NCBI RefSeq assembly: GCF_902459465.1
Contig: NC_047062.1
Span: 30,876,001 to 30,940,000, forward strand
DNA from: Asterias rubens
Taxonomy: Eukaryota
Direction: 5' to 3'
Length of the DNA: 64,000 bases
The position numbers and the translations under genes are program-made. A model generated the notes under the pieces. The model made no database searches and was not told the DNA's origin. It saw only the letters and a program-made list of their open reading frames with translations. This document shows, piece by piece, positions 2,809-61,088 of the stretch; within the stretch, counting starts at the first letter, position 1, and each line of letters opens with the position of its first letter.

Positions 2809-4892
2809 ATGGAGCAGCTCAACCTCTCAGAAGCATCAGTCAAAAGTACTGATGGAGACTCCCCAATGGAAGACACCGAAGGTTTCACCAAATTCACCTT
2901 AGCTCTCTACTGCATAATCTGCGTGGTTGGTATCACTGGTAACTTACTGGTTGCCATCGTACTCCTCCGTGTGCCGTCACTGAGGTCTAACACCAGTGAT
3001 TTCTTAGTGCATCTCTCCCTTGTAGATTTCATGGCCTGTGTTATGGTCATCCCAGCTTATCTTCTGCCTAATACCCACTCTCCTCCAAACCCCGGGTTCT
3101 TCGGTGAGTTTTGGTGTCGATTTTACACCAGCGGTTTCCTGTTTTGGTTCTTCACGATGACGTCAGTCTTGGGTTTGACTGTTGTCAATTTGGAGCGCTA
3201 TGTAGCCATCGTCCACCCACACAAATACAAGACTCTTTTCATCAAACGAAACAGATACATCATGATTGCTGCGTGTTGGGCTTCGGCTGCAGTTTTAGAT
3301 TCGTCTTCCTTTTTAACGCATGAAGAAGATGAAGTAGTGGGATGTCATTTTAAAGGCTGGTCCAACAGAGGAGCTCAGGCGACACTTGGCTTGTTTTCTT
3401 TCACCGGCAAGTTCTTTTTTCCATTCGCTGTTATGATTCTTGCTCAACTGAAAGTCATCTCTACGCTGAGCAGACAAGTGAAGATGCTAACTGCTCGAAC
3501 AGGTTAGTTAGAAAGTTATTATTTCACATTAACGAGAGCAAGAAAGTATCAACTGTTTTATTTTTCAAAGGACTCGGTGCATACCATTTGTTTTTCTTTT
3601 CTGATTTTTTTAATTTAAACTAGTTAATTATATTAGAGTAACTTTAATAGGGAATAAATTGACAATTCGTTTTCCCCTACTTTGACTTGAGCTATAGGCG
3701 TATTGGAATAAATGCAAAGCCACATCAATATTAAGAGATACACGTTTTAGCCTCTAAGCCCATAGACCAATACCAATGCGCAAGCGCAGACTGTTGAATG
3801 AGGTGCATTGTGGGATATATATGGATCAAATTTGGACACCAGCTAGACCACAATGCACCTAATTCCAAGCTTTACGCGCGCGCCCCGGTATTTGCGAAAA
3901 GGTCTGTGACCCAATGAAAACTGCTAGCACTCGACCCCGATGATCCACCCCCTGATCGTCTGCAGATTGAAGGAACACGTTGCCTTGGATCGGTCGAGTT
4001 GGTCTTTGAAAAGCGTTCTGTAAACCGTTTGTTCTAAAATCGATATGGTTAGAAAGATGTTGTAAAAGTAGAATACAATGATCTACACAAATATGCCTCG
4101 AAATTGCGTGGTTTTCTTTTCACCTCGTCGACTAACACGGTAATTTTGAGTGATACTTGTGTGAATCATTATTTTCTACTTTTAAAACATCTTTCTAACC
4201 ATATGCATTTCATAAACGGTTTCAAACGCTTTTTATACACCAACTCGTCCAATACAAGGCAACGTGTTCCTTTAAAGCAAAATCAGTTTGTTTTTGTTAC
4301 AATTACCTTATAGGGTAATTTCATTGAATCAATGCTGACAATTATGGAATTTTTGTTATGATAGACCGACTGTGGGGCATGCAGATACAAAAAGTTTGAT
4401 GATCCCTCTGATTTTAGTTCGACTGATCATGCCGTATCAAAATGGGTACCACGAAAACATGTAGATTTACCTCTTTTTAAGATCGAACCTAACGCGTTAG
4501 TTTGTATCGACTTTGCCTTTTCTACAGCCTCTATGGGAGTCAATCCAAGAGACCAGCGTGAAATGTGGCAGCTCCGAGCCTCCCAAACCCTGGTGAAGAC
4601 ACTCCTGGCCTGCGTCATCACATTCGGTGTGTGCTGGACTCCAAACCAAGTCTGGTTCCTGCTCTTCAATATTGGAGTTCATGTGACTCTAGGTGATCCT
4701 ATCCACCGTCTCACTGTCATCTTAGCCGTTGGTAATTCCTGTGTGAATCCAGTCATTTACACAATGACCAACAAGCCGTTCCGTAAAGGGATCAGGGAGC
4801 TGTTTTGTAAGCAGCGGGATTCGAACCAGGTGACTGACGGTGTAGCGACTGGCACTGTGTCTCAGACCGTCTCCAATACCCAAGAACAATAA
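2809..4892 (+). CDS. Class A GPCR copy 2 (chimeric: unique N-terminus, B-type body, A-type tail); exons 2809..3502 and 4528..4892, 352 aa
   Basis: 7TM motifs GN (TM1), LSLVD (TM2), C..ERY (TM3), CWTP (TM6), NPVIY (TM7); phase-1 GT-AG intron joins RT-G|CC-SMG in frame; 694+365 nt. Confidence 0.9.
3967..4275. mobile_element. Non-autonomous TIR element, Kolobok-like, in B-type intron (copies 10358..10669, 20370..20681, 29960..30275)
   Basis: TIR AGGAACACGTTGCCTTG / CAAGGCAACGTGTTCCT; flanks TTGA and TTAA; RR..YY termini. Confidence 0.7.
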
Positions 4893-5278
4893 GCGAGAAG
4901 AAGGTCACGATGGGGCCAACCATGCGAGGGGTATCGGGACAATGAGCATTTCACGAAATCACGGCAGCAACCCACTTTATGATTTTGTGTTTTGCACAAC
5001 TGTTTATACTGCATAATCATTGTGTATGTCGTGGATACTTTCGTAATGTACAGTTTCGATGAACTTGCTGAACAACTAAAGAAAACACGCGAATAAGACA
5101 AAAACCACGGATTGCGCTCCGTTTACGCAAAAACCCAAATGATCACGGTAATAAGACATCTTATAAGCGAATGCTCAGATAAACAAACGTTTTTTATCAC
5201 AATTATAGCACAACACGAGGTCAATGTCAAAACAAATTATTGTATTGTTAAGAGGTACATGGTTCAAGGGAGTTTTGA

Positions 5279-5651: not shown

Positions 5652-5919
5652 AACCTTTGGTGCGAGAACAAAAAACATTCCATGACAATATAACTCCCTT
5701 TTTCTTCTTCTGTTTTTCTTATATAAAAGATTATTAAGTTTTTACTACATAAATTTGTGTACAATAGTCGTGCACTCATGCTAAAAATCCCCCGGCCCCG
5801 AAAGAGCCATAAAAACCGCACGATTTATACTTAATAATGATATCAACTGTAAAGGTAACTTAACATCTCACTTTGGTTTTCAACTGAGTTGGTTGACGAA
5901 GAATTTCTATATCAGTCAC

Positions 5920-5927
5920 TGACGTCA
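5920..5927. promoter_or_regulatory. Perfect CRE palindrome TGACGTCA 228-231 bp upstream of GPCR ATGs (also 8959, 15928, 18968, 25516, 28543)
   Basis: ATCAGTCACTGACGTCAAAT is invariant in both A- and B-type upstream regions at a fixed distance; function is inferred only. Confidence 0.5.
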
Positions 5928-6147
5928 AATTATTCCACCGGCCTCTTGGCGGACGGATGCAAAGAGTGCAAATTTTCATATTTTGTTTTCATAGCAGGAG
6001 CAAAAAAGGCTGCAACTGAAAATTTCGTATGATAACGCATGAACTCATTTAATGAGTAGAGCTGAAAAATACCATACAGAATTCTTGTGAGAAGAAATTC
6101 CGTGACAAATATTTCAACTCAAGACACAAGCCATAAACTAAACCATC

Positions 6148-7931
6148 ATGGATCGATTTGAGAGTCTTCGCACGACTTTACCAACAGTTTTCCAAGAAGC
6201 AAATAGTGACGAGGATGTTGCAACGAAAGAAAGCGATGCGTTCACCAAGTTCGTCACATCTCTCTACTGCATAATCTGCGTGGTTGGTATCACTGGTAAC
6301 TTACTGGTTGCCATCGTACTCCTCCGTGTGCCGTCACTGAGGTCTAACACCAGTGATTTCTTAGTGCATCTCTCCCTTGTAGATTTCATGGCCTGTGTTA
6401 TGGTCATCCCAGCTTATCTTCTGCCTAATACCCACTCTCCTCCAAACCCCGGGTTCTTCGGTGAGTTTTGGTGTCGATTTTACACCAGCGGTTTCCTGTT
6501 TTGGTTCTTCACGATGACGTCAGTCTTGGGTTTGACTGTTGTCAATTTGGAGCGCTATGTAGCCATCGTCCACCCACACAAATACAAGATCATTTTCATC
6601 AAACGGAACAAATACATCATGATTGCTGCGTGTTGGGGTTGTTCCACACTTTCAAAATCTTACAATTGGTTTATATTTGAAGAAGATGAAGTAGTGGGAT
6701 GTCATTTTAAAGGCTGGTCTAACAGAGGAGCTCAGGCGGCATTTGGCTTGTTCACTTTTACGGTCCAATTCTTCGCTCCGTTCACAGTGATGATTTTTGC
6801 GCAGCTGAAAGTTATCTCGACGCTGAACAGACAAGTGAAGATGTTAGCTACTCGAACAGGTTAGTTAATCAGTCTTTACATATCTCAAGATTGACGAGAA
6901 ATTTAATGTATCAATATTTTCCGTTCTTCAATGGACTCAGTGCATACAATTTGTTTTTCTTTTTTGGGTATTCAGCAAATATCGTGTTATGCATCATACA
7001 TTGATACGATTTAGTTGTGGCTTACACCTACTCGTGTAATAGGCGCCTTTATAAAGCCGGCACCTTTAGAGAAGGCCAGGGTATACGTTTCCGTTCGTGC
7101 CATTGATGACCCGGCGAAAACTTTCGGCACTCGACCGCGATCCAACCGGTGGTTTAATAAATAATTTTAATTTAAATTTTTTTATTTTATAATAACCGTT
7201 ATAAGAAATTGCATTGAAGCGATTAAACTATTTATGACGACACACTGCTAAAACGAAAAAAAAATCAAATTTGTACACTAATTTCGGCCTTAACATTTAC
7301 ATCGGTGTTATTTCAATACCATTGTGGTGACTACTTTGATTCTTAATGATGTGACAACACAATTTGTGTAAATTGTAGCCGTCCAAGTTGATGGTGTAGA
7401 CTGACTGTGAGGCAATGATCTAAAGTATTTCGTTGCATTTTAGCGCTTCTGGACACAGTTGCGATGATCTTGAACGGCTTAGTACCGTACAACACACATT
7501 TGGAGATTTAACGGTGGTTGACTCGCACCTTATGTTTTATTTTGTGTCGACTGCATTCTCTTGCAGCCTCTTTGGGAGTAAATCCAATCAACCAGGATAA
7601 AATGTGGCAGCTCCGAGCCTCCCAAACCCTCGTGAAGACACTCCTGGCATGCGTCATCACATTCGGTGTGTGCTGGATTCCAAACCAAGTCTGGTTCCTG
7701 CTCTTTAACTTCGGTGTTCCATTAAATCTAGGTGGACCTGATCACCATCTCACTGTCATCTTAGCCGTTGGTAATTCCTGTGTGAATCCAGTCATTTACA
7801 CAATGACCAACAAGCCGTTCCGTAAAGGGATCAGGGAGCTGTTTTGTAAGCAGCGGGATTCGAACCAGGTGACTGACGGTGTAGCGACTGGCACTGTGTC
7901 TCAGACCGTCTCCAATACCCAAAAACAATAG
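6148..7931 (+). CDS. Class A GPCR copy 3 (chimeric: B-type head, A-type body); exons 6148..6859 and 7567..7931, 358 aa
   Basis: Same 7TM motifs; donor 6859/6860, acceptor TTGCAG at 7566; open frame throughout. Confidence 0.9.
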
Positions 7932-9186
7932 GCGAGAAGAAGGTCACGATGGGGCCAACCATGCGAGGGGTATCGGGACAATGAGCATTTCACGAAATTA
8001 CGGCAGCAACCCACTTTATGATTTTGTGTTTTGCACAACTGTTTATACTGCATAATCATTGTGTATGTCGTGGATACTTTCGTAATGTACAGTTTCGATG
8101 AACTTGCTGAACAACTAAAGAAAACACGCGAATAAGACAAAAACCACGGATTGCGCTCCGTTTACGCAAAAACCCAAATGATCACGGTAATAAGACATCT
8201 TGTAAGCGAATGCTCAGATAAACAAACGTTTTTTATCACAATTATAGCACAACACGAGGTCAATGTCAAAATAAATTATTGTATTGTTAAGAGGTACATG
8301 GTTCAAGGGAGTTTTGATTAAAGACACCGGACACTGTTGGTAATTGTCAAAGACCAGTCTTCTCACTTGGTGTCTCTCAACACTATGCATAAAATAACAA
8401 ACCTGTGAAAATTTGAGCTCAGTATTGGTCGTCGAAGTTGCGAGATAATAATGAAAGACAAAACACCCTTGTCACACGATGTTGTGTGCTTTCAGATTGA
8501 GTTAGAGAGCTCAAAATCTAATTCCGAGTTCTCGAAATCAAATTTGTTGAAAATTACTTCTGTCTCGAAAACTACGTCACTTCAGAGGGAGCAGTTTCTC
8601 ACAATGTTTTATAAATTCAACCTTTCCCAAGGATTGTTGCTTATATACTTATTATTTTGAGTAATTGCCAATAGTGTCCACTGCCTTTAAAACCTTTTGT
8701 GCGAGTACAAAAAACATTCCATGACAATATAACTCCCTTTTTCTTCTTCTGTTTTTCTTATATAAAAGATTATTAAGTTTTTACTACATAAATTTGTGTA
8801 CAATAGTCGTGCACTCATGCTAAAAATCCCCCGGCCCCGAAAGAGCCATAAAAACCGCACGATTTATACTTAATAATGATATCAACTGTAAAGGTAACTT
8901 AACATCTCACTTTGGTTTTCAACTGAGTTGGTTGACGAAGAATTTCTATATCAGTCACTGACGTCAAATTATTCCACCGGCCTCTTGGCGGACGGATGCA
9001 AAGAGTGCAAATTTTCATATTTTGTTTTCATAGCAGGAGCAAAAAAGGCTGCAACTGAAAATTTCGTATGATAACGCATGAACTCATTTAATGAGTAGAG
9101 CTGAAAAATACCATACAGAATTCTTGTGAGAAGAAATTCCGTGACAAATATTTCAACTCAAGACACAAGCCATAAACTAAACCATC

Positions 9187-11286
9187 ATGGATCGATTTGA
9201 GAGTCTTCGCACGACTTTACCAACAGTTTTCCAAGAAGCAAACAGTGACGAGGATGTTGCAACGAAAGAAAGCGATGCGTTCACCAAGTTCGTCACATCT
9301 CTCTACTGCATAATCTGCGTGGTTGGTATCACTGGTAACTTACTGGTTGCCATCGTACTCCTCCGTGTGCCGTCACTGAGGTCTAATACCAGTGATTTCT
9401 TAGTGCATCTCTCCCTTGTAGATTTCATGGCCTGTGTTATGGTCATCCCAGCTTATCTTCTGCCTAATACCCACTCTCCTCCAAACCCCGGGTTCTTCGG
9501 TGAGTTTTGGTGTCGATTTTACACCAGCGGTTTCCTGTTTTGGTTCTTCACGATGACGTCAGTCTTGGGTTTGACTGTCAATTTGGAGCGCTATGTAGCC
9601 ATCGTCCACCCACACAAATACAAGACTCTTTTCATCAAACGAAACAGATACATCATGATTGCTGCGTGTTGGGCTTCGGCTGCAGTTTTAGATTCGTCTT
9701 CCTTTTTAACGCATGAAGAAGATGAAGTAGTGGGATGTCATTTTAAAGGCTGGTCCAACAGAGGAGCTCAGGCGACACTTGGCTTGTTTTCTTTCACCGG
9801 CAAGTTCTTTGTTCCATTCGCTGTGATGATTCTTGCTCAACTGAAAGTCATCTCTACGCTGAGCAGACAAGTGAAGATGCTAACTGCTCGAACAGGTTAG
9901 TTAGAAAGTTATTATTTCACATTAACGAGAGCAAGAAAGTATCAACTGTTTTATTTTTCAAAGGACTCGGTGCATACCATTTGTTTTTCTTTTCTGATTT
10001 TTTTTAATTTAAACTAGTTAATTATATTAGAGTAACTTTAATAGGGAATAAATTGACAATTCGTTTTCCCCTACTTTGACTTGAGCTATAGGCGTATTGG
10101 AATAAATGCAAAGCCACATCAATATTAAGAGATACACGTTTTAGCCTCTAAGCCCATAGACCAATACCAATGCGCAAGCGCAGACTGTTGAATGAGGTGC
10201 ATTGTGGGATATATATGGATCAAATTTGGTCACCAGCTAGACCACAATGCACCTAATTCCAAGCTTTACGCGCGCGCCCCGGTAATTGCGAAAAGGTCTA
10301 TGACCCAATGAAAACTGCTAGCACTCGACCCCGATCCAACCCCAGATCGTCTGCAGATTGAAGGAACACGTTGCCTTGGATCGGTCGAGTTGGTCTTTGA
10401 AAAGCGTTCTGTAAACCGTTTGTTCTAAAATCGATATAGTTAGAAAGATGTTGTAAAAGTAGAATACAATGATCTACACAAATATGCCTCGAAATCGCAT
10501 GGTTTTCTTTTCACCTCGTCGACTAACACGGTAATTTTCAGTGATACTTGTGTGAATCATTATTTTCTACTTTTAAAACATCTTTCTAACCATATGCATT
10601 TCATAACAAACGGTTTCAAACGCTTTTTATACACCAACTCGTCCGATACAAGGCAACGTGTTCCTTTAAAGCAAAATCAGTTTGTTTTTGTTACAATTAC
10701 CTTATAGGGTAATTTCATTGAATCAATGCTGACAATTATGTAATTTTTGTTATGATAGACCGACTGTGGGGCATGCAGATACAAAAAGTTTGATGATCCC
10801 TCCGATTTTAGTTCGACTGATCATGCCGTATCAATATGGGTACCACGAAAACATGTAGATTTACCTCTTCTTAAGATCGAACCTAACGCGTTAGTTTGTA
10901 TCGACTTTGCCTTTTCTACAGCCTCTATGGGAGTCAATCCAAGAGACCAGCGTGAAATGTGGCAGCTCCGAGCCTCCCAAACCCTGGTGAAGACACTCCT
11001 GGCCTGCGTCATCACATTCGGTGTGTGCTGGACTCCAAACCAAGTCTTGTTCCTGCTCTTCAATATTGGAGTTCATGTGACTCTAGGTGATCCTATCCAC
11101 CGTCTCACAGTCATCTTAGCCGTTGGTAATTCCTGTGTGAATCCAGTCATTTACACAATGACCAACAAGCCGTTCCGTAAAGGGATCAGGGAGCTGTTTT
11201 GTAAGCAGCGGGATTCGAACCAGGTGGCTGACGGTGTAGCGACTGGCACTGTGTCTGAGACCGTCTCCAATGCCCAAGAACAATAG
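9187..11286 (+). CDS. Class A GPCR copy 4 (B type); exons 9187..9895 and 10922..11286, 357 aa; one-Val deletion in TM3
   Basis: 7TM motifs; LTVN instead of LTVVN before ERY; NQVL instead of NQVW in TM6; canonical splice sites. Confidence 0.85.
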
Positions 11287-11646
11287 GAGAGAAGAAGATC
11301 ACGTTGGGAAACAAACAATAGAAAGTTGGAAAGTGGAAGTAATTTTACCTAGATGTGAACTTTCATCCTTTAGTAATTACATAGATTTTCAGCAAACAAT
11401 TTTTGTTATTATTACGGAACGTTCGCGGTAGCCGGATGTCAATTTTGTAAGTACGTTGAATGAAATGAAGTAAATATCATGGCATTGCACCGAAGTTTAA
11501 AGCAGTGTCACATTATTCAAGAATAGAGCATTGAGGGCGTTTCCGAGCAGCCGATTATGTGTGTTTTTTTTTAAGAAAAGGGGGCATTTATACATGGTGG
11601 TGTTGTAAAAAATAATATCCTTTACGTTGCAACAGATTAACATTGT

Positions 11647-12020
11647 TTAAAGCCATTGGACCCTTTCGGTAAACAGTGTTGTCCAAGGCCCACACTTTGT
11701 GTACCACAACTTCTATTTCAAATAACAAACCTGTGAAAATTTAGGCCTAATCGGTCATCGGAGTCGGGAGAAAACAACGGAAAATCCCACCCTTGTTTCC
11801 GCGCGTTTCGCCGTGTCATGACATGTGTTTAAAATAAATCCGTAATTCTGGTTAACGAGAATTTATATTGTTTTGCGGTTTTCTCAAAAGTAAAGCATTT
11901 CATGGAATAATATTTCAAGAGAAGTCTTTCACCATTGCCTTCTGTAAACCCTGTAAGTTATTTGTAAATCTGTGAACTTTTTTCTTTTTTTTCTGAACCG
12001 AAAGGGTCCAATGGCTTTAA
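11647..12020. mobile_element. Kolobok-like MITE in spacer S2 (copies 21657..22029, 31250..31622)
   Basis: TTAA on both sides; TIR AGCCATTGGACCCTTTCGGT / ACCGAAAGGGTCCAATGGCT. Confidence 0.8.
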
Positions 12021-13295
12021 TGCACCATGTTACATCCAGTTTAAGTTTAAGATAAAGTGCAAGTTTGTATTTAACATAAAACAATTGCCAACATTACAAA
12101 ACGTCGATCACCTCATACATATTTCATACTGCAAGGTATGACCAAAAATTGTGTAATATAACAGTAAAAATAGGATCCAACAACAACACCGCCATTTTAA
12201 AACCAGTCTAAAATAAGAGGACCTGCGTTTGAGGGGAAGTATCAATTTGTTGTTAATTTAATGGTTTGTGTCTGTTAACTATTTCAAAATAATGTTTTTA
12301 ATTGAATTTTTAAACAGCTGACATCCTGTTTCCACTAAGCACATTACAACGAACAAAAAAAAATTAATATTGATGTTGCTGGGAAAACAGAAACAATTCG
12401 TTTTTCAAAATTTCTTGCACGATCATTATGCTCATTATTATTTTCCGATGCAGCAATTGAGTTGGATTTGCATGCAACGGTGTAAGTAAATCGCTCAATG
12501 TATAATTAACAAGTGTAAATCACAAATACAGGTGGTTAGCTACGTACACGAAGAGTGCCTATACGTTCGCGAACACGGCTAAAATACCTGAGAAACTGTG
12601 AAACACACTTGACCCCGCTTTTGTTTTCGCAGGTTCTTCATTTTACGGTAAGCAGAACCGTTAAAAAGTAGCCCTGTTGTGAACTCATCGGACGTTATTA
12701 CTAAAATGAACATTACAGGGTGTTAAGGCTAACAAACAGTTGCTGACAGTGTGAGCACTTGATATAATCCACCATTAATATACATAAACTGATGTTTGAT
12801 ATTGGGTCGGTAGAAATTGGATCAGCCATCTGATGGGTCACTAGAAAATAGTGAAAACCGATTACACATTAATATTTTGCGTTACATCGACTTAAACAAA
12901 ATGAATAAAACGCTCACAGAGCGATAAACTCCAAACGGGAAATTGGTTTTGTTTTGTTCCTCAACAAACAATGACATTTCAGACAGAAATATTGCAAGTG
13001 ATGTTTTCTACTATCATCATCATTAGACCGTGTAAGTTTTATGTAAATCTGTAAAAAAAAATTCTCCGTAAAGTTCCTTAATTGATTGTAGGTAGGGTGT
13101 TGTGAAACGCTTTTGCATCCGTTTCTTTTTATTCAAATCGATCAGTTGCCTTGTCGATTAGGAAATAAATTAATATAAGTAAAGAGTCAATGGTGACCTT
13201 TGTATCATTCGAAGAGAGTTGAAGGAAGAATACACAGAGTACGTTACTGCTCTGTTCTTTCTTATCAATCACTTAACCCTCTAGTCCCTGCATGC

Positions 13296-13848
13296 CACCG
13301 CCCGAGTTTCTGAAAACCAATTTTTCAAGATTCTTGCAGTAAACAACTGGAATCGTAATTCAATTTTTAAAAGATAGCTTAATACATAATATGCACAATT
13401 TTTTAACCTTTCGGTAATGTTTGTATAAAAGTACAAGCTCCCATTGGGAACAATAATCGGCTCTCGAATATTTGTTTGTAAAGATTATTTCATTGAAGCT
13501 AATGACGATGAAATAATTTAGCTCATACCAATTAGTAAACACAACGGAAACTGTATTTATTCATCATTAATATTGATATTGTCGAAAACTAACGCCTTCG
13601 CATTTAATTAGTTCGAGCATTGAGTCAGATAAAAGCATTGAAAAGCTATTGTGTCCATTTTATCCTTACAAAAAAATATTCGAGAGCCGATTATTGTTCC
13701 CAATGGGAGCTTGTACTTTTATACAAACATTACCGAAAGGGTAAAAAAATGTGCATAAATATTAAGCTATCTTTTAAAAATTGAACTACGATTCCAGTTG
13801 TTTACTGCAAGAATCTTGAAAAATTGGTTTTCAGAAACTCGGGCGGTG
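13296..13848. repeat. Long inverted repeat / foldback element, ~190-bp arms and ~175-bp spacer (copies 23305..23858, 32882..33436)
   Basis: 13296..~13485 is the near-exact reverse complement of ~13662..13848; no clear TSD. Confidence 0.8.
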
Positions 13849-15395: not shown

Positions 15396-15549
15396 TTAAG
15401 AAATCATTTAGGTAAGAGGTAAATGTACATCTCTGCTAACGATTGTGTCGACTGCATGCAATCAATGCATCATTAAGAAATCATTTAGGTAAGAGGTAAA
15501 TGTACATCTCTGCTAACGATTGTGTCGACTGCATGCAATCAATGCATCA
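15396..15549. repeat. 77-bp direct tandem duplication, private to the first S2 spacer
   Basis: Two adjacent copies starting TTAAGAAATCATTTAGG; single copy near 35.0 kb; deleted in the second S2. Confidence 0.9.
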
Positions 15550-21297: not shown

Positions 21298-24200
21298 GAG
21301 AGAAGAAGATCACGTTGGGAAACAAACAATAGAAAGTTGGAAAGTGGAAGTAATTTTACCTAGATGTGAACTTTCATCCTTTAGTAATTACACAGATTTT
21401 CAGCAAACAATTTTTGTTATTATTACGGAACGTTCGCGGTAGCCGGATGTCAATTTTGTAAGTACGTTGAATGAAATGAAGTAAATATCATGGCATTGCA
21501 CCGAAGTTTAAAGCAGTGTCACATTATTCAAGAATAGAGCATTGAGGGCGTTTCCGAGCAGCCGATTATGTGTGTTTTTTTTAAGAAAAGGGGGCATTTA
21601 TACATGGTGGTATTGTAAAAAATAATATCCTTTACGTTGCAACAGATTAACATTGTTTAAAGCCATTGGACCCTTTCGGTAAACAGTGTTGTCCAAGGCC
21701 CACACTTTGTGTACCACAACTTCTATTTCAAATAACAAACCTGTGAAAATTTAGGCCTAATCGGTCATCGGAGTCGGGAGAAAACAACGGAAAATCCCAC
21801 CCTTGTTTCCGCGCGTTTCGCCGTGTCATGACATGTGTTTAAAATAAATCCGTAATTCTGGTTAACGAGAATTTATATTGTTTTGCGGTTTTCTCAAAAG
21901 TAAAGCATTTCATGGAATAATATTTAAGAGAAGTCTTTCACCATTGCCTTCTGTAAACCCTGTAAGTTATTTGTAAATCTGTGAACTTTTTTCTTTTTTT
22001 TCTGAACCGAAAGGGTCCAATGGCTTTAATGCACCATGTTACATCCAGTTTAAGTTTAAGATAAAGTGCAAGTTTGTATTTAACATAAAACAATTGCCAA
22101 CATTACAAAACGTCGATCACCTCATACATATTTCATACTGCAAGGTATGACCAAAAATTGTGTAATATAACAGTAAAAAATGTATCCAACAACAACACCG
22201 CCATTTTAAAACCAGTCTAAAATAAGAGGACCTGCGTTTGAGGGGAAGTATCAATTTGTTGTTAATTTAATGGTTTGTGTCTGTTAACTATTTCAAAATA
22301 ATGTTTTTAATTGAATTTTAAAACAGCTGACATCCTGTTTCCACTAAGCACATTACAACGAACAAAAAAAAAATAATATTGATGTTGCTGGGAAAACAGA
22401 AACAATTCGTTTTTCAAAATTTCTTGCACGATCATTATGCTCATTATTATTTTCCGATGCAGCAATTGAGTTGGATTTGCATGCAACGGTGTAAGTAAAT
22501 CGCTCAATGTATAATTAACAAGTGTAAATCACAAATACAGGTGGTTAGCTACGTACACGAAGAGTGCCTATACGTACGCGAACACGGCTAAAATACCTGA
22601 GAAACTGTGAAACACACTTGACCCCGCTTTTGTTTTCGCAGGTTCTTCATTTTACGGTAAGCAGAACCGTTAAAAAGTAGCCCTGTTGTGAACTCATCGG
22701 ACGTTATTACTAAAATGAACATTACAGGGTGTTAAGGCTAACAAACAGTTGCTGACAGTGTGAGCACTTGATATAATCCACCATTAATATACATAAACTG
22801 ACGTTTGATATTGGGTCGGTAGAAATTGGATCAGCCATCTGATGGGTCACTAGAAAATAGTGAAAACCGATTACACATTATTATTTTGCGTTACATCGAC
22901 TTAAACAAAATGAATAAAACGCTCACAGAGCGATAAACTCCAAACGGGAAATTGGTTTTGTTTTGTTCCTCAACAAACAATGACATTTCAGACAGAAATA
23001 TTGCAAGTGATGTTTTCTACTATCATCATCATTAGACCGTGTAAGTTTTATGTAAATCTGTAACATTTTTTTCTCCGTAAAGTTCCTTAATTGATTGTAG
23101 GTAGGGTGTTGTGAAACGCTTTTGCATCCGTTTCTTTTTATTCAAATCGATCAGTTGCCTTGTCGATTAGGAAATAAATTAATATAAGTAAAGAGTCAAT
23201 GGTGACCTTTGTATCATTCGAAGAGAGTTGAAGGAAGAATACACAGAGTACGTTACTGCTCTGTTCTTTCTTATCAATCACTTAACCCTCTAGTCCCTGC
23301 ATGCCACCGCCCGAGTTTCTGAAAACCAATTTTTCAAGATTCTTGCAGTAAACAACTGGAATCGTAATTCAATTTTTAAAAGATAGCTTAATACATAATA
23401 TGCACAATTTTTTAACCTTTCGGTAATGTTTGTATAAAAGTACAAGCTCCCATTGGGAACAATAATCGGCTCTCGAATATTTGTTTGTAAAGATTATTTC
23501 ATTGAAGCTAATGACGATGAAATAATTTAGCTCATACCAATTAGTAAACACAACGGAAACTGTATTTATTCATCATTAATATTGATATTGTCGAAAACTA
23601 ACGCCTTCGCATTTAATTAGTTCGAGCATTGAGTCAGATAAAAGCCTTGAAAAGCTATTGTGTCCATTTTATCCTTACAAAAAAATATTCGAGAGCCGAT
23701 TATTGTTCCCAATGGGAGCTTGTACTTTTATACAAACATTACCGAAAGGGTAAAAAAAATGTGCATAAATATTAAGCTATCTTTTAAAAATTGAACTACG
23801 ATTCCAGTTGTTTACTGCAAGAATCTTGAAAAATTGGTTTTCAGAAACTCGGGCGGTGCTTTTAATGAAACAAACCGTAAAGGAAAAGACGTCTGCATTC
23901 AGCCTGGTTCGATTTAAAAATCTGGGAGACCTACATTTTACAAGGACTGCCAAATTATTATAAGTAATCACAACAAATTGTATAGGCCTACACGTGAATT
24001 CTTTTTTAGATTGCGAAGCAGCGAAGGGGAATAATGTAAAGGTCATGAACAGGTACTGGACATGAACAGATGCTGACCATTATGAAACAGAGTCTCTGCC
24101 AGTAAGGTATTCACCCGACCCATATACTTTCACTTATTTTGTATTTTGGGAGTCATGGCGTACATACACAAAAACGATCTGTTTGATTTTGTACGCACTC

Positions 24201-25745
24201 CGAGATCCACGTAAGGTTATTATTGTGGTTTTAAGGCATATAGGGTCCACAGTCCACACATGCAAGTACAGAGCGTTTGGAATAATAAGGCCAGATACAC
24301 GACATTGGCCCCTAAAATGGTCATTGCTTGAAACGGTCCAGGAAGGTTCATTAGGATTATACAAAATTACCAGTAGGACTATACAAGCACAGGAATGTAA
24401 TTTGGTGTGCTCTAACTAATTGAATTCCAAGATTAGCTGTTTGTAGCAATTCAACAATAATGTATTGAGGAAACCCACAAAACCTCAATATTGATAACAT
24501 AAAAGACATTCTCCTTGCCAATGACAATAAAGTAAATACCAACATTCCTGCTGCGCAGCCAATACTAATACAAATGACGCCCTCTTGTGTTGCGCCAAAC
24601 ACCTGTGCGGTGACGTATGGTTTTGATTGGTCCGTAGTGCCGGTATGCAGGTGTCGCGCTTGCGCATTGTCCTTGCCGTGCGTGAAACTCTTTTCTTCGA
24701 CGAAAAAGTGACAAATAAATTGTGTGTGTGCTTTTTCGCTTGTTTGTGCATATCTATCAATCATGGACTGCATGGTGGTCGAGTTTGAACTTTACTTTGA
24801 CTTCACAACGAGACGCATATCACGCCACAGACAGAGGTGGGGGTGTTTTCACTCTATCTAGTGAGCCTCACCATGTACTAGGTTTTCTTCCTACATGATC
24901 TCATGAGAAATGTAGTTAAAACAAATAATAATATAGGCCTAAGCCTAATAAAAAACAAAGCAAACGGACTTAAATTAAATAATAGTGTTAGGTTCAGGGG
25001 CCCACGTACGCTTTGTTTACGTGACAAACATGACAAACATTGTTAATAAAAAATTCGCACCAAGCAAGTTCACAAGGGAATTAACATTTTCACAACTAAC
25101 TGTTCAAATCATATGCCCGACATTAAGATTATGTTTGACTTACCCCGACCATAAGTTTTGCAAGGGAGATGAGCTCAGTTTATTCAACCATCTTCAACTC
25201 CTCGCACATTTCCACACTTTTTAAATGTCGTGCGTGGCGAAAAAAACGCCCGCCCTCTGTAGATCTCAAATGATTAATAAAACTTTTTTTGAGAGAACAA
25301 AAAAACATTAAATGACAACTCTTTACTTGCACCTTTAAAATATTATAGTTATTACTTAATAAACGTGTGTTTATCATTCGTGCATTCATGCTAAAAAAAA
25401 CGGCCTCGGCAGAGCCATAAAAACGGAAACATTAATATTCTACATTTTATCAACTGAAAATGTAACTTAATTTTGTTCAACTAAGTTGGTTGAAGAAGAG
25501 TTTTGTATCAGTCACTGACGTCAAATCATTCGGCCGGCCTTTTGGCGGATTTATGCAAAGAGCACATTTTCGAGTACTCATTGCGAGAGCAGACACGGTA
25601 GCAAATTGAGCAGGTTGCAACTGATGTCCGTGTGATAAAACCGCATGATAAATTCACTCAACGAGCACTGAACTTAATTCTTGTGAGCAGAACATTCTGT
25701 GACAAAATATTCCAACTCAAGACACACGCCAAAAACTAAACCATC

Positions 25746-27515
25746 ATGGATCAATTTGAGAGTCTTGGCACGACTTTATCAACAGTTTTCCAAGGAACAA
25801 AGAGTTCTGAGGAGGTTCCAATGGAAGACAACGATGCGTTTGCCAAGTTCATCTTATCTCTCTACTGCACGATCTGCGTGGTTGGTATCACAGGTAACTT
25901 ACTCGTTGCCATCGTACTCCTCCGTGTGCCGTCACTGCGGTCTAACACCAGTGATTTCTTGGTGCATCTCTCCCTTGTAGATTTCATGGCCTGTGTTCTG
26001 GTCATCCCAGCTTATCTTCTGCCTAATACCCACTCTCCTCCAAACCCCGGGTTCTTCGGTGAGTTTTGGTGTCGATTTTACACCAGCGGTTTCCTGTTTT
26101 GGTCCTTCGCGTTGACGTCAATCTTGGGTTTGACTGTTGTCAATTTGGAGCGCTATGTAGCCATCGTCCACCCACACAAATACAAGACCATTTTCATCAA
26201 ACGGAACAAATACATCATGATTGCTGCGTGTTGGGGTTGTTCCACACTTTCAAAATCTTACAATTGGTTTATATTTGAAGAAGATGAAGTAGTGGGATGT
26301 CATTTTAAAGGCTGGTCTAACAGAGGAGCTCAGGCGGCATTTGGCTTGTTCACTTTTACGGTCCAATTCTTCGCTCCGTTCACAGTGATGATTTTTGCGC
26401 AGCTGAAAGTTATCTCGACGCTGAACAGACAAGTGAAGATGTTAGCTACTCGAACAGGTTAGTTAATCAGTCTTTACATAAAATTATCTCAAGATTTACG
26501 AGAAATTTAATGTATCAATATTTTCCATTCTTTAATGGACTCAGTGCATACAATTTGTTTTTCTTTTTTGGGTATTCAGCAAATATCGTGTTATGCATCA
26601 TACATTGATACGATTTAGTTGTGGCTTACACCTACTCGTGTAATAGGCACCTTTATAAAGCCGGCACCTTTAGAGAAGGCCAGGGTATACGTTTCCGTTC
26701 GTGCCATTGATGACCCGGCGAAAACTTTCGGCACTCGACCGCGATCCAACCGGTGGTTTAATAAATAATTTTAATTTTAATTTTTTTATTTTATAATAAC
26801 CGTTATAAGAAATTGCATTGAAGCGATTAAACTATTTTTGACGACACACTGCTCAAACGAAAAAAAATCGGCCTTAACATTTACATCGGTGTTATTTCAA
26901 TACCATTGTGGTGACTACTTTGATTCTTAATGATGTGACAACACCATTTGTGTAAATTGTAGCCCCTCAAGTTGATGGTGTAGACTGACTGTGAGGCAAT
27001 GATCTAAAGTATTTCGTTGCATTTTAGCGCTTCTGGACACAGTTGCGATGATCTTGAACGGCTTAGTACCGTACAACACACATTTGAAGATTTAACGGTG
27101 GTTGACTCGCACCTTATGTTTTATTTTGTGTCGACTGCATTCTCTTGCAGCCTCTTTGGGAGTAAATCCAATCAACCAGGGTAAAATGTGGCAGCTCCGA
27201 GCCTCCCAAACCCTGGTGAAGACACTCCTGGCCTGCGTCATCACATTCGGTGTGTGCTGGACTCCAAACCAAGTCTGGTTCCTGCTCTTCAACTTCGGTG
27301 TTCCATTAAATCTAGGTGGACCTGATCGCCATCTCACTGTCATCTTAGCCGTTGGTAATTCCTGTGTGAATCCAGTCATTTACACAATGACCAACAAGCC
27401 GTTCCGTAAAGGGATCAGGGAGCTGTTTTGTAAGCAGCGGGATTCGAACCAGGTGACTGACGGTGTAGCGACTGGCACTGTGTCTCAGACCGTCTCCAAT
27501 ACCCAAGAACAATAG
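25746..27515 (+). CDS. Class A GPCR copy 7 (A type); exons 25746..26457 and 27151..27515, 358 aa
   Basis: 7TM motifs intact; canonical splice sites; exon-1 protein identical to copy 5. Confidence 0.9.
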
Positions 27516-28773
27516 GCGAGAAGAAGGTCACGATGGGGCCAACCATGCGAGGGGTATCGGGACAATGAGCATTTCACGAAATCACGGCAGCAACCCACTT
27601 TATGATTTTGTGTTTTGCACAACTGTTTATACTGCATAATCATTGTGTATGTCGTGGATACTTTCGTAATGTACAGTTTCGATGAACTTGCTGAACAACT
27701 AAAGAAAACACGCGAATAAGACAAAAACCACGGATTGCGCTCCGTTTACGCAAAAACCCAAATGATCACGGTAATAAGACATCTTGTAAGCGAATGCTCA
27801 GATAAACAAACGTTTTTTATCACAATTATAGCACAACACGAGGTCAATGTCAAAACAAATTATTGTATTGTTAAGAGGTACATGGTTCAAGGGAGTTTTG
27901 ATTAAAGACACCGGACACTGTTGGTAATTGTCAAAGACCAGTCTTCTCACTTGGTGTCTCTCAACACTATGCATAAAATAACAAACCTGTGAAAATTTGA
28001 GCTCAATATTGGTCGTCGAAGTTGCGAGATATGAATGAAAGACAAAACACCCTTGTCACACGATGTTGTGTGCTTTCAGATTGAGTTAGAGAGCTCAAAA
28101 TCTAATTCCGAGTTCTCGAAATCAAATTTGTTGAAAATTACTTCTGTCTCGAAAACCACGTCACTTCAGAGGGAGCAGTTTCTCACAATGTTTTATAAAT
28201 TCAACCTTTCCCAAGGATTGTTGCTTATATACTTATTATTTTGAGTAATTGCCAATAGTGTCCACTGCCTTTAAAACCTTTTGTGCGAGAACAAAAAACA
28301 TTCCATGACAACATAACTCCCTTTTTCTTCTTCTGTTTTTCCTTTATAAAAGATTATTAAATTTTTACTACATAAATTTGTGTACAATAGTCGTGCACTC
28401 ATGCTAAAAATCCCCCGGCTCCGAAAGAGCCATAAAAACCGCACGATTTATACTTAATAATGATATCAACTGTAAAGGTAACTTAACATCTCACTTTGGT
28501 TTTCAACTGAGTTGGTTGACGAAGAATTTCTATATCAGTCACTGACGTCAAATTATTCCACCGGCCTCTTGGCGGACGGATGCAAAGAGTGCAAATGTTC
28601 ATATTTTGTTTTCATAGCAGGAGCAGAGAAAAAGGCTGCAACTGAAAATTTCTTATGATAACGCGTGAACTCATTTAATGAGTAGAGCTGAAAAATACCA
28701 TACAGAATTCTTGTGAGAAGAAATTCCGTGACAAATATTTCAACTCAAGACACAAGCCATAAACTAAACCATC

Positions 28774-30888
28774 ATGGATCGATTTGAGAGTCTTCGCACG
28801 ACTTTACCAACAGTTTTCCAAGAACAGTTTTCCAAGAAGCAAATAGTGACGAGGATGTTGCAACGAAAGAAAGCGATGCGTTCACCAAGTTCGTCACATC
28901 TCTCTACTGCATAATCTGCGTGGTTGGTATCACTGGTAACTTACTGGTTGCCATCGTACTCCTCCGTGTGCCGTCACTGAGGTCTAATACCAGTGATTTC
29001 TTAGTGCATCTCTCCCTTGTAGATTTCATGGCCGGTGTTATGGTCATCCCAGCTTATCTTCTGCCTAATACCCACTCTCCTCCAAACCCCGGGTTCTTCG
29101 GTGAGTTTTGGTGTCGATTTTACACCAGCGGTTTCCTGTTTTGGTTCTTCACGATGACGTCAATCTTGGGTTTGACTGTTGTCAATTTGGAGCGCTATGT
29201 AGCCATCGTCCACCCACACAAATACAAGACTCTTTTCATCAAACGAAACAGATACATCATGATTGCTGCGTGTTGGGCTTCGGCTGCAGTTTTAGATTCG
29301 TCTCCCTTTTTAACGCACGAAGAAGATGAAGTAGTGGGATGTCCTTTTAAAGGCTGGTCCAACAGAGGAGCTCAGGCGACACTTGGCTTGTTTTCTTTCA
29401 CCGGCAAGTTCTTTGTTCCATTCGCTGTGATGATTCTTGCTCAAGTGAAAGTCATCTCTACGCTGAGCAGACAAGTGAAGATGCTAACTGCTCGAACAGG
29501 TTAGTTAGAAAGTTATTATTTCACGTTAACGAGAGCAAGAAAGTATCAACTGTTTTATTTTTCAAAGGACTCGGTGCATACCATTTGTTTTTCTTTTCTG
29601 ATTTTTTAATTTAAACTAGTTAATTATATTAGAGTAACTTTAATAGGGAATAAATTGACAATTCGTTTTCCCCTACTTTGACTTGTGCTATAGGCGTATT
29701 GGAATAAATGCAAAGCCACATCAATATTAAGAGATACACGTTTTAGCCTCTAAGCCCATAGACCAATACCAATGCGCAAGCGCAGACTGTTGAATGAGGT
29801 GCATTGTGGGATATATATGGATCAAATTTGGATACCAGCTAGACCACAATGCACCTAATTCCAAGCTTTACGCGCGCGCCCCGGTATTTGCGAAAAGGTC
29901 TATGACCCAATGAAAACTGCTAGCACTCGACCCCGATCCAACCCCTGATCGTCTGCAGATTGAAGGAACACGTTGCCTTGGATCGGTCGAGTTGGTCTTT
30001 GAAAAGCGTTCTGTAAACCGTTTGTTCTAAAATCGATATGGTTAGAAAGATGTTGTAAAAGTAGAATACAATGATCTACACAAAATAATATGCCTCGAAA
30101 TCGCGTGGTTTTCTTTTCACCTCGTCGACTAACACGGTAATTTTCAGTGATACTTGTGTGAATCATTATTTTCTACTTTTAAAACATCTTTCTAACCATA
30201 TGCATTTCATAACAAACGGTTTCAAACGCTTTTTATACACCAACTCGTCCGATACAAGGCAACGTGTTCCTTTAAAGCAAAAGCAGTTTGTTTTTGTTAC
30301 AATTACCTTATAGGGTAATTTCATTGAATCAATGCTGACAATTATGGAATTTTTGTTATGATAGACCGACTGTGGGGCAGATACAAAAAGTTTGATGATC
30401 CCTCTGATTTTAGTTCGACTGATCATGCCGTATCAATATGGGTACCACGAAAACATGTAGATTTACCTCTTCTTAAGATCGAACCTAACGCGTTAGTTTG
30501 TATCGACTTTGCCTTTTCTACAGCCTCTATGGGAGTCAATCCAAGAGACCAGCGTGAAATGTGGCAGCTCCGAGCCTCCCAAACCCTGGTGAAGACACTC
30601 CTGGCCTGCGTCATCACATTCGGTGTGTGCTGGACTCCAAACCAAGTCTGGTTCCTGCTCTTCAATATTGGAGTTCATGTGACTCTAGGTGATCCTATCC
30701 ACCGTCTCACTGTCATCTTAGCCGTTGGTAATTCCTGTGTGAATCCAGTCATTTACACAATGACCAACAAGCCGTTCCGTAAAGGGATCAGGGAGCTGTT
30801 TTGTAAGCAGCGGGATTCGAACCAGGTGGCTGACGGTGTAGTGACTGGCACTGTGTCTGAGACCGTCTCCAATGCCCAAGAACAATAG
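28774..30888 (+). pseudogene. Class A GPCR copy 8 (B type), frameshifted; exons 28774..29499 and 30524..30888
   Basis: 14-bp tandem duplication AACAGTTTTCCAAG (28809-28822, 28823-28836) shifts the frame and gives a TAA after 46 codons; further private changes MAC to MAG, GCH to GCP, QLK to QVK. Confidence 0.8.
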
Positions 30889-61022: not shown

Positions 61023-61088
61023 TCAAAATCTGTTAAAATTTATATGTTTTGGTTGATATTGTCAATTCTTTCCTCAACAGATGAAAAT

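What the first reader, a model, noticed from the sequence alone, without database searches (positions are those of the whole stretch)
2809..30888. Block-mosaic receptors: near-invariant TM core with hypervariable extracellular faces
Seen: A and B genes, whose introns and spacers barely align, are almost identical even at synonymous sites over TM1-ICL2, TM6 and TM7-helix 8. They differ sharply at the N-terminus, mid-TM3 (FFTMTSV vs SFALTSI), TM4-ECL2 (AVLDSSSFLTH vs TLSKSYNWFIF vs AVSRSYFFFIY), TM5 and ECL3 (IGVHVTLGDPIHR vs FGVPLNLGGPDRH vs VGVPMAPGGPFQH). Inference: gene conversion homogenises the signalling scaffold while ligand-contacting segments are kept distinct, which would act as a cassette-like diversity generator for a GPCR.
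Basis: partly seen in the sequence, partly recalled or inferred. Interest (0 to 1): 0.75.

Follow-up and report, generated by a model that had tools for sequence, protein, structure and literature searches.

The report
Patchwork receptor genes in starfish
A row of neighbouring receptor genes in the common starfish has repeatedly copied pieces of itself from one gene to another, so the genes are patchworks of identical and very different stretches; this is a clear new example of a well-known process, and there is no sign of a special diversity-making device.

Summary
The window is Asterias rubens chromosome LR699092.1 at about 30.9 Mb. It holds eight two-exon class A GPCR genes in tandem.

**Observation: confirmed.** A and B differ at 117 of 1077 coding bases, and the differences are clustered. 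Synonymous divergence runs from 0 (codons 76-147) to 0.8-1.0 (TM4-ECL2, ECL3). This unevenness is significant (P=0.0008) and is absent between B orthologues. The A and B introns are only 65% identical once a MITE is removed.

**Gene conversion: supported.**
- Paralogues 1.6-29 Mb away do accumulate synonymous changes in the same blocks.
- A permutation test finds significant shared tracts.
- The A. amurensis array shows a B-to-A transfer of TM2-ECL1-TM3 after the species split.
- g1 and g2 are hybrid genes whose breakpoints lie in identical blocks.

**"Selection keeps ligand-contact segments distinct" and "cassette diversity generator": not shown.**
- ECL1 and half of ECL2 are homogenised, and ICL3 is variable.
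- dN/dS is not significantly above 1.
- Variable patches are themselves transferred.
- Two copies here are broken and two more look impaired; in the sister species three of the six copies are pseudogenes or remnants.
- A barrier to exchange in already diverged segments explains the pattern equally well.

**Verdict:** partial concerted evolution in a birth-and-death receptor array. It is a new member of a known kind (chicken FFAR2, opsins, protocadherins). The scan had separately noted the g2 recombinant.

The parts
1..2088 (+). g0_C: partial C-type receptor gene. Exon 1 runs off the window start to 453 and exon 2 is 1685-2088. There is an in-frame TAG at 327-329, so it is a probable pseudogene.
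   Evidence: The orthologue amC in A. amurensis has CAG at that codon.
2809..4892 (+). g1: triple mosaic gene (exons 2809-3502 and 4528-4892). The 5' flank and N-terminus are G1-type, the body and intron are A-type, and the C-tail and 3' flank are B-type. The reading frame is intact.
   Evidence: The head matches amG1, the intron is 98.9% identical to the A intron, and the 3' flank is 99.2% identical to the B 3' flank. Breakpoints fall at nt 113-200 and about 900-1026 of the CDS.
6148..7931 (+). g2: A/B hybrid gene (exons 6148-6859 and 7567-7931). The 5' flank and the N-terminus through mid-TM3 are A-type. TM4 onward, the intron and the 3' flank are B-type. The reading frame is intact.
   Evidence: The 5' flank is 99.5% identical to A, and the intron is 98.7% identical to B. 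The breakpoint lies inside the identical block at nt 377-443.
9187..11286 (+). g3: A-type gene (exons 9187-9895 and 10922-11286). One Val codon is missing in TM3 just before ERY, and there is a W-to-L change in TM6.
16158..17940 (+). g4: B-type gene (exons 16158-16869 and 17576-17940), intact. It is the orthologue of A. amurensis amB1-3.
   Evidence: dS to amB1 is 0.05; intron K 0.085.
19196..21297 (+). g5: A-type gene (exons 19196-19907 and 20933-21297). The open frame is intact, but the CWxP proline is replaced by Gln (21045-21047).
25746..27515 (+). g6: B-type gene (exons 25746-26457 and 27151-27515), intact.
   Evidence: exon 1 is identical to g4.
28774..30888 (+). g7: A-type pseudogene (exons 28774-29499 and 30524-30888). 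A 14-bp tandem duplication at 28809-28836 shifts the frame, and the copy carries several private nonsynonymous changes.
5724..34839 (+). Three tandem copies of a unit of about 10 kb (B gene, 1.26-kb spacer, A gene, spacer of about 4.9 kb). Copies differ by 0.7-1.5% in substitutions.
   Evidence: This is far less than the 8.5-9% intron divergence between species, so the triplication is recent.
20370..20681 (.). Palindromic MITE-like insert of 312 bp in the A-type intron, also present at 3967-4275, 10358-10669 and 29960-30275. It accounts for part of the failure of A and B introns to align.
   Evidence: Contig pile-up from a high-copy repeat.

Best explanation
**What it is.** This is a tandem, birth-and-death array of orphan, starfish-specific class A GPCR paralogues (types C, G1, A and B). 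It is undergoing partial concerted evolution.

**How it works.**
- Misaligned pairing between neighbouring paralogues during germline recombination or repair produces two kinds of event:
  1. Short non-crossover conversion tracts of tens to a few hundred bases.
  2. Unequal crossovers that make hybrid genes and change copy number.
- Exchange needs near-identical DNA. It therefore starts and ends in the blocks that protein constraint keeps similar: TM2b-TM3, DRY-ICL2, ECL2b, TM6 and TM7-H8.
- Blocks that had already diverged strongly (N-terminus, TM4b-ECL2a, TM5-ICL3, ECL3) are rarely overwritten. They persist as old, type-specific segments.
- The result is the mosaic seen here, with dS about 0 next to dS 0.5-1.

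**Shown:** the mosaic, its significance, the post-speciation B-to-A transfer, the hybrid genes, and the recent triplication.

**Inferred:** the homology-barrier reason why the divergent blocks persist, the meiotic mechanism, and a chemosensory or peptide-sensing role for the receptors.
For: **Identity of the genes.**
- Pfam 7tm_1, E=1.8e-39.
- AF2 model with seven helices plus H8, pTM 0.76.
- Homologues above 40% identity occur only in asteroids.

**Mosaic.**
- 117 of 1077 differences, clustered.
- dS is 0 to 0.97 by block: 0.076 in conserved blocks against 0.334 in variable blocks.
- Synonymous heterogeneity P=0.0008, against P=0.96 for the orthologue pair.
- 0 of 50 against 26 of 60 synonymous sites, Fisher P=6.5e-9.

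**Old divergence of A and B.** The introns are 64.7% identical after the MITE is removed, z about 13 over shuffles, K about 0.48.

**Not nucleotide-level constraint.** Five dispersed paralogues (1.6-29 Mb away) have pS 0.2-0.7 in the same blocks.

**Recombination tests.**

| Pair | Tract | P |
|---|---|---|
| A and B | 22-27 consecutive polymorphic sites, nt 254-357 or further | <=0.0004 |
| B and amG1 | ECL3, nt 827-882 | 0.0002-0.0008 |
| A and g0_C | nt 734-824 | 0.0004 |

**Outgroup (A. amurensis).**
- Its array has B x3 and a truncated A.
- At nt 226-305 the A remnant differs from A_rub at 15 of 80 sites and matches no sampled paralogue.
- Over that block (nt 226-357), A_rub is the same as B of both species (0-1 of 132).
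- At TM3b-DRY, B_rub equals A_rub and amG1, whereas amB equals C.

**Hybrids and copy number.**
- g1 and g2 have 99% identical flanks of the other type.
- The unit triplication is at 0.7-1.5% divergence.
- Scaffold L009 is A-type with B states only at the four mid-TM3 sites.
Against: - For TM7-H8 the control is ambiguous. Dispersed close paralogues also have low pS there (0.075), so some other constraint or older exchange may contribute.
- The orthologue coding dS (0.05) is lower than the intron K (0.085), although the counts are small.
- Differences are enriched at generic pocket positions (12/37 against 37/269, P=0.006). This could mean that selection, and not only a homology barrier, protects some blocks.
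- L009 and L010 are short-read metagenome scaffolds. They could be assembly chimeras across identical 67-105-nt stretches.
- Expression of the genes was not shown: RNA contigs gave almost no exon coverage and no splice junctions.
Confidence: 0.8

Rival explanations
1. Gene conversion homogenises the signalling scaffold, while diversifying or balancing selection actively protects the ligand-contacting segments. The array then works as a cassette-like generator of new receptor specificities by re-assorting modules.
For: - Variable residues lean towards the extracellular half (P=1.6e-6) and towards generic pocket positions 3.36, 3.37, 3.40, 4.56, 4.60, 5.38, 5.42, 5.46, 7.32, 7.35 and 7.36 (P=0.006).
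- The type-specific blocks of B are kept between species.
- Four nonsynonymous mid-TM3 differences sit in an otherwise identical 189-nt tract with no synonymous change.
- Intact recombinants g1 and g2, and scaffold L009, show modules in new combinations.
- Family-wide pN/pS is about 1.1 in TM4b-ECL2a.
Against: - No dN/dS value is significantly above 1.
- ECL1, ECL2b and the C-tail are variable in the family but homogenised between A and B, and ICL3 is variable.
- The TM4 block differs at 13 of 14 consecutive residues, lipid-facing ones included.
- The deep pocket positions of TM2, TM6 and TM7 are identical.
- Copies are decaying: g0 and g7 are broken, and g3 and g5 carry changes at highly conserved positions. 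In A. amurensis, A, C and G1 are lost or broken.
- The pocket list was recalled from memory, and no coordinates of the model were available.
Confidence: 0.17
2. A simple recent duplication of one gene. Purifying selection keeps the core, and fast (positive or relaxed) amino-acid evolution occurs in the variable segments. No gene conversion is involved.
For: - The whole-gene dS (0.17) is modest.
- The amino-acid conservation of the core blocks extends across the whole family.
Against: - Synonymous differences are themselves clustered, with dS up to 0.8-1.0 in the variable blocks.
- The introns are about 35% diverged.
- Both A and B predate the species split, yet nt 254-442 shows 0 synonymous differences.
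- Site patterns are incongruent with A. amurensis.
Confidence: 0.02
3. Assembly artefact. The mosaics, hybrids and triplicated unit come from collapsed or chimeric assembly of near-identical tandem copies.
For: - The three units are 98-99% identical, which makes copy number hard to assemble.
- The metagenome scaffolds could be chimeric.
Against: - The independent A. amurensis assembly carries B-type genes with the same block pattern, plus an A remnant.
- Independent ENA scaffolds reproduce A-type and B-type exons.
- NCBI gene models exist for g1-g5.
- The A/B mosaic does not depend on copy number.
Confidence: 0.01

Closest known systems
Chicken FFAR2 (GPR43) paralogue array (Meslin et al. 2015, PMC4453067)
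   Same: A lineage-specific tandem expansion of a class A GPCR. Extensive gene conversion keeps the paralogues similar. Elevated dN/dS near the ligand groove was proposed to reduce effective conversion and so diversify function.
   Different: - This is a starfish orphan family with one intron.
- A and B are much older paralogues (intron K about 0.48), so the contrast between blocks is sharper.
- An outgroup species dates one transfer.
- No significant positive selection was found here.
Partial concerted evolution of tandem receptor genes in vertebrates: L/M opsins, protocadherin variable exons, olfactory-receptor clusters (from established knowledge, not tested here)
   Same: Conversion homogenises part of the coding sequence between tandem paralogues. 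Functionally distinct sites or ectodomain segments stay different. Hybrid genes arise by unequal crossover with breakpoints in shared sequence.
   Different: - Different gene family and phylum.
- No known ligand or phenotype is tied to the retained differences here.
- Many copies are degenerating.
Echinoderm lineage-specific rhodopsin-type GPCR expansions proposed as chemoreceptors (Acanthaster ApORs, Roberts et al. 2017, PMC5442662; holothurian survey, PMC7042368)
   Same: Asteroid-restricted class A GPCRs that cluster in the genome and evolve rapidly. Automatic names (galanin-, somatostatin-, moody-like) have no real orthology behind them.
   Different: - Membership of these particular genes in the published ApOR set was not checked.
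- Expression in tube feet or sensory tentacles was not shown here.
- Those papers, read here only as abstracts and outlines or as an abstract excerpt, do not mention gene conversion.
Programmed cassette diversification (chicken immunoglobulin pseudogene conversion, trypanosome VSG, Neisseria pilin)
   Same: Copying of variable segments between tandem homologues through shared conserved sequence.
   Different: - Those systems are somatic or clonal, directional, and run from silent donors into one expression site with dedicated machinery.
- Here the donors and acceptors are ordinary genes, exchange goes both ways, and events are rare germline ones dated on a species-split scale.

Membership tests
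Class A (rhodopsin-type) GPCR | Seven transmembrane helices plus helix 8, and a match to the family profile | tested here: met
   - Pfam 7tm_1, E=1.8e-39, over the full profile 1-260.
- AF2 model with seven long helices plus H8, pTM 0.76.
- Foldseek top hits are opioid, orexin, galanin and neurotensin receptors with TM-scores 0.72-0.84 normalised by target length.
Class A (rhodopsin-type) GPCR | Signature motifs N1.50, D2.50, E/DRY, CWxP and NPxxY, and the TM3-ECL2 cysteine pair | tested here: met
   GN51, LVD79, ERY135-137, CW(T/I)P273-276, NPVIY311-315, C109 and C185 are present in the A and B consensus. Copy g5 alone has CWTQ.
Orthologue of galanin, somatostatin, opioid, moody or octopamine receptors (the database names) | Closer to that receptor family than to others, with one-to-one orthology across phyla | tested here: not met
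   - Solved peptide and aminergic receptors all score alike, E about 1e-19 to 1e-20 at 19-25% identity in the structural alignment.
- Outside asteroids, the best hit is a hemichordate protein at 29%.
- The names differ between near-identical copies.
Echinoderm lineage-specific candidate chemosensory GPCR expansion | Lineage-restricted, rapidly evolving, genomically clustered paralogues | tested here: met
   - Dozens of asteroid paralogues at 43-81% identity.
- Tandem arrays in two Asterias species.
- Pseudogenes and copy-number change between the species.
Echinoderm lineage-specific candidate chemosensory GPCR expansion | Expression in sensory organs (tube feet, terminal tentacles) | tested here: inconclusive
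   Contigs of four RNA-labelled runs gave depth 0-7 on exons and no splice junctions. The signal was dominated by repeats. The tissue of the runs is unknown.
Partial concerted evolution by interparalogue gene conversion or unequal crossover | Synonymous divergence is heterogeneous along the gene, and much lower in some tracts than the neutral divergence of the introns | tested here: met
   dS is 0-0.97 by block, P=0.0008, and intron K is about 0.48.
Partial concerted evolution by interparalogue gene conversion or unequal crossover | The low divergence is not explained by constraint on the nucleotide sequence | tested here: met
   Dispersed paralogues show pS 0.2-0.7 in the same blocks. TM7-H8 is the exception and remains ambiguous (pS 0.075).
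Partial concerted evolution by interparalogue gene conversion or unequal crossover | Phylogenetic incongruence between blocks when an outgroup species is used | tested here: met
   - At nt 226-357, A_rub groups with B of both species and not with the A. amurensis A remnant.
- At TM3b-DRY, B_rub groups with A_rub while amB groups with C.
Programmed cassette-type diversity generator | Somatic or programmed directional transfer from silent donors to an expression site, with dedicated machinery | not testable with these tools
   Nothing in the sequence suggests it. Donors and acceptors are ordinary genes, exchange is bidirectional, and events are shared by all cells of the assembled individuals and dated against a species split.

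The most novel reading that the evidence does not exclude
Recombination among the tandem receptors acts as a selected, population-level module shuffler. The type-specific N-terminus, mid-TM3, TM4-ECL2, TM5 and ECL3 cassettes are re-assorted through the shared identical blocks. Individuals would then carry different functional chimeras (such as g1, g2 and the L009 variant) with distinct ligand spectra. That would be a germline combinatorial repertoire for chemosensing in an animal without adaptive receptors.
Probability: 0.12. Interest if true: 0.6.

Novelty: new member of a known kind. Interest (0 to 1): 0.35.

Why it matters
- It gives a clean, dated example of how tandem receptor genes evolve as mosaics. 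One can see which blocks were overwritten after the A. rubens / A. amurensis split, where unequal crossovers broke, and which segments escaped.
- It warns that trees, dN/dS scans and orthology calls for echinoderm GPCR expansions will mislead unless recombination is partitioned out.
- It also shows that the automatic names of these genes are uninformative.
- If the retained blocks do set ligand specificity, the natural chimeras g1 and g2 are ready-made domain swaps for deorphanising a starfish-specific receptor family. Asterias species are fishery and aquaculture pests whose chemical ecology is of practical interest.

Tried and rejected
1. **First genomic alignment.** A whole-locus MAFFT alignment of A and B with 1.5-kb flanks was useless, because the flanks of adjacent genes overlapped physically. 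It was replaced by part-by-part alignments.
2. **Nucleotide-level constraint.** Considered as the cause of identical synonymous sites. Rejected for all blocks except TM7-H8, using five dispersed paralogues.
3. **"Introns unalignable means unrelated introns".** Rejected. After the MITE is removed the introns have the same length and are 64.7% identical, and both align to the P0003 intron.
4. **RNA evidence for expression and splicing.** Contigs of four runs gave almost nothing on the exons, only repeat pile-ups. No conclusion was drawn.
5. **Positive selection.** Pairwise and pooled pN/pS by block were never significantly above 1. Proper site models were not available.
6. **Mapping variable residues onto the 3D pocket.** The structure tool returns no coordinates, so only generic residue numbering with a pocket list recalled from memory could be used. 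This is weak evidence.
7. **Search for a donor of the A-specific blocks.** None of the sampled paralogues (C, G1, P0003, P0004, P0005, P0007, P0013) is a near-identical donor, so these blocks look like old A-lineage sequence.
8. **Literature.** No paper in the library links gene conversion with echinoderm GPCR arrays.

Full report
**What is in the window**

- The best protein hit (99% identity) is an Asterias rubens protein on a 33.8-Mb chromosome. The exact look-up of copy g5 places it at 30,894,196-30,898,297 of LR699092.1.
- The region 1-30,888 holds eight same-strand genes for rhodopsin-class GPCRs (Pfam 7tm_1, E=1.8e-39).
- Each gene has two exons split by a phase-1 GT-AG intron in the third intracellular loop (ACAG|GTTAGT ... 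CAG|CC).
- By sequence type the order is: g0 (C), g1 (A body), g2 (B body), g3 (A), g4 (B), g5 (A), g6 (B), g7 (A).
- From g2 onward the array is three copies of a B-spacer-A-spacer unit of about 10 kb. The copies differ by only 0.7-1.5% in substitutions.
- An AlphaFold model built on 30 homologues gives a standard 7TM plus helix 8 fold with a beta-hairpin ECL2 (pTM 0.76).
- Foldseek and sequence searches place it near peptide receptors (opioid, orexin, galanin, somatostatin) and aminergic ones alike, at only 19-25% identity.
- Homologues above 40% identity are all from starfish.
- This is therefore an orphan, asteroid-specific family. Its database names (galanin-, moody-, octopamine-like) even differ between near-identical copies.

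**Checking the observation**

- A (g5) and B (g4) have equal-length coding sequences. They differ at 117 of 1077 bases and 67 of 358 residues.
- The differences are clustered.
  - None at nt 254-358, 377-443 or 916-1017.
  - 23 of 41 in TM4b-ECL2a, 32 of 155 in TM5-ICL3, and 17 of 47 in ECL3.
- Nei-Gojobori estimates by block are:

| Block | dS |
|---|---|
| N-terminus | 0.13 |
| TM1-TM2a | 0.23 |
| Codons 76-147 | 0 (0 of 49.5 synonymous sites) |
| ICL2-TM4a | 0.25 |
| TM4b-ECL2a | 0.82 |
| ECL2b | 0.09 |
| TM5-ICL3 | 0.49 |
| TM6 | 0.04 |
| ECL3 | 0.97 |
| TM7-H8 | 0.04 |
| C-tail | 0 |

- Placing the 26 clean synonymous differences at random gives the observed unevenness in only 0.08% of simulations. 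The B_rubens/B_amurensis orthologue pair is perfectly even (P=0.96).
- The introns indeed barely align. BLAST finds only the first 105 nt or so at 75%, plus a 42-nt patch.
- Part of the mismatch is a 312-bp palindromic MITE-like insert in every A intron. Without it the two introns are 713 and 706 bp long and 64.7% identical (score 358 against 203 +/- 11 for shuffles), which gives K about 0.48.
  1. TM1-TM2a is not nearly identical at synonymous sites.
  2. The flanks align in part (5' flank 80%, 3' flank 67%).
  3. ECL1 and the second half of ECL2 are identical between A and B although they are extracellular, while ICL3 is variable.
- Overall, though, variable residues do lean towards the extracellular half (46/158 against 19/200, P=1.6e-6).

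**Is it constraint or exchange?**

- I took the coding sequences of five paralogues on the same chromosome, all outside this array: P0003 at 25.9 Mb, P0004 at 10.8 Mb, P0005 at 32.5 Mb, P0007 at 18.6 Mb and P0013 at 1.7 Mb.
- Among them the "conserved" blocks accumulate synonymous change freely.
  - Mean pS is 0.43 in TM1-TM2a, 0.52 in DRY-ICL2 and 0.48 in TM6.
  - Even among the closest pairs pS is 0.20-0.34, against 0-0.04 between A and B.
- So identical synonymous sites between A and B reflect recent common ancestry of those tracts, not selection on the nucleotides.
- The exception is TM7-helix 8. There the dispersed close paralogues are also low (pS 0.075), and I leave this unexplained.

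**Outgroup evidence**

- The orthologous A. amurensis array (CP134952.1) reads, in order:
  - a C pseudogene;
  - a G1 pseudogene;
  - three B genes;
  - an A remnant (A-type 5' flank 96% identical, plus the first 310 nt or so of exon 1 with a 20-bp deletion);
  - the same spacer, COA8 and photolyase genes as in this window.
- Hence A and B both predate the species split. That split is calibrated at K=0.085-0.092 in B introns and dS=0.05 in B coding sequence.
- Three patterns are incongruent with simple descent.
  1. At nt 226-305 the A. amurensis A remnant differs from A. rubens A at 15 of 80 sites and matches no sampled paralogue. Over that block (nt 226-357), A. rubens A equals B of both species (0-1 of 132). 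This indicates a B-to-A transfer in the A. rubens lineage, and it includes the family-variable ECL1.
  2. In TM3b-DRY, B_rubens shares one haplotype with A and G1. B_amurensis shares the other with C of both species.
  3. The ECL3 of the A. amurensis G1 gene is B-type (5 of 47 against 17-18 of 47).
- A GENECONV-style permutation of polymorphic sites gave:

| Pair | Tract | P |
|---|---|---|
| A and B | nt 254 onward | <=0.0004 |
| B and amG1 | ECL3 | 0.0002-0.0008 |
| A and g0_C | nt 734-824 | 0.0004 |

**Hybrid genes**

- g2 has the A-type 5' flank (99.5% identical), N-terminus and mid-TM3. It switches to B inside the identical block nt 377-443 and keeps the B intron and 3' flank.
- g1 has three parts.
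  - Its head is the 5' flank and N-terminus of G1, orthologous to amG1.
  - Its body and intron are A-type (98.9% identical).
  - Its C-tail and 3' flank are B-type (99.2% identical). The switch lies within TM7-H8.
- Both breakpoints lie in shared identical sequence, as expected for non-allelic homologous recombination.
- An independent marine-metagenome scaffold (L009) is A-type over 1.2 kb, except that exactly the four mid-TM3 sites carry the B state. This looks like a short conversion tract, but a short-read assembly chimera across the identical flanks cannot be excluded.

**Does selection keep the ligand-contact segments distinct?**

- In favour:
  - Differences are enriched at generic pocket positions (12/37 against 37/269, P=0.006). 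The position list was recalled from memory and no model coordinates were available.
  - They coincide with the positions that vary across the family (entropy 2.07 against 1.22 bits, P=3e-12).
  - B's type-specific blocks are retained in both species.
- Against:
  - dN/dS in the variable blocks is 0.34-1.6 and never significant. Family-wide pN/pS peaks at about 1.1 in TM4b-ECL2a.
  - TM4 differs at 13 of 14 consecutive residues whichever way they face.
  - The deep pocket residues of TM2, TM6 and TM7 are identical.
  - Conversion also covers ECL1, ECL2b and the C-tail.
  - Variable patches are themselves exchanged.
  - Copies are decaying. g0 has a stop codon and g7 a 14-bp duplication. g3 lacks a codon next to ERY, and g5 has Gln for the CWxP proline. 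In A. amurensis, A, C and G1 are broken.
- A purely mechanical reading is that exchange needs near-identity. Segments that diverged early then escape, and constrained segments keep being homogenised. This reading explains the mosaic without special selection. It rests on established theory of sequence-dependent conversion, which is my own knowledge and was not tested here.

**Comparison with what is known**

- The concept has direct precedent in a GPCR. In the chicken FFAR2 array, extensive gene conversion was combined with elevated dN/dS near the ligand groove, and this was proposed to limit conversion there (PMC4453067).
- Partial concerted evolution with retained functional sites is also textbook for L/M opsins and protocadherin variable exons (from my own knowledge).
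- Starfish GPCR expansions have been described as candidate olfactory receptors (PMC5442662). I found no paper linking them with gene conversion.
- Nothing suggests a programmed cassette system of the immunoglobulin, VSG or pilin type.

**Verdict**

The "selected diversity generator" half is unproven and, on balance, unlikely to be more than ordinary birth-and-death evolution with ectopic recombination.
- This is a new member of a known kind, of moderate interest.
- The scan had separately noted the g2 recombinant on this same window (s1-150615). By the A. amurensis evidence g2 is an A head on a B body, which is the reverse of that note's label.

Noticed in passing
window 3967-4275, 10358-10669, 20370-20681, 29960-30275: A 312-bp palindromic, MITE-like insert sits in every A-type intron (its two arms are about 77% complementary). 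Contigs from RNA-labelled runs pile up on it, so it belongs to a very high-copy repeat family.
   Followed up: partly
window 18224-18754 (copies at 5176-5706, 8215-8745, 27799-28329; relatives near 45379, 48155, 49278, 54825): The B-to-A intergenic spacer contains another high-copy repeat. Summed contig depth exceeds 100,000 in four runs, and many contigs join it to the intron repeat.
   Followed up: no
codons 301-339 of the receptors (for example window 21120-21236 in g5): The TM7-helix 8 block has unusually low synonymous divergence even among paralogues 1.6-20 Mb away (pooled pS 0.075 against 0.27 gene-wide). This could be old interlocus exchange or a nucleotide-level constraint. It is unexplained.
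   Followed up: partly
window 327-329; 28809-28836; about 9576; 21045-21047: Signs of decay in individual copies.
- g0_C has an in-frame TAG.
- g7 has a 14-bp tandem duplication that shifts the frame.
- g3 lacks one Val codon just before ERY.
- g5 has Gln in place of the CWxP proline.
   Followed up: yes
L001 1-21767 and L002 1-23346 (A. amurensis CP134952.1, 4.006-4.038 Mb): The sister species expanded the same array differently. It has three tandem B genes, while C and G1 are pseudogenes. The third B gene has an internal rearrangement. A is reduced to its 5' flank plus about 310 nt of exon 1.
   Followed up: yes
L010 816-1252: A metagenome scaffold carries a B-type intron and exon 2 (98% identical), but with a different C-tail and 3' flank that partly resemble the distant paralogue P0004. 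It is either another recombinant or an assembly chimera.
   Followed up: partly
window about 38346-43120: COA8 lies downstream of the array, and a DNA photolyase/cryptochrome gene lies on the minus strand. Both are in conserved synteny with A. amurensis at about 90-92% identity.
   Followed up: no
window 61044-61649: An open reading frame of 201 aa contains a Nudix-like GGHPEPG motif. It is probably an exon of a Nudix hydrolase gene.
   Followed up: no
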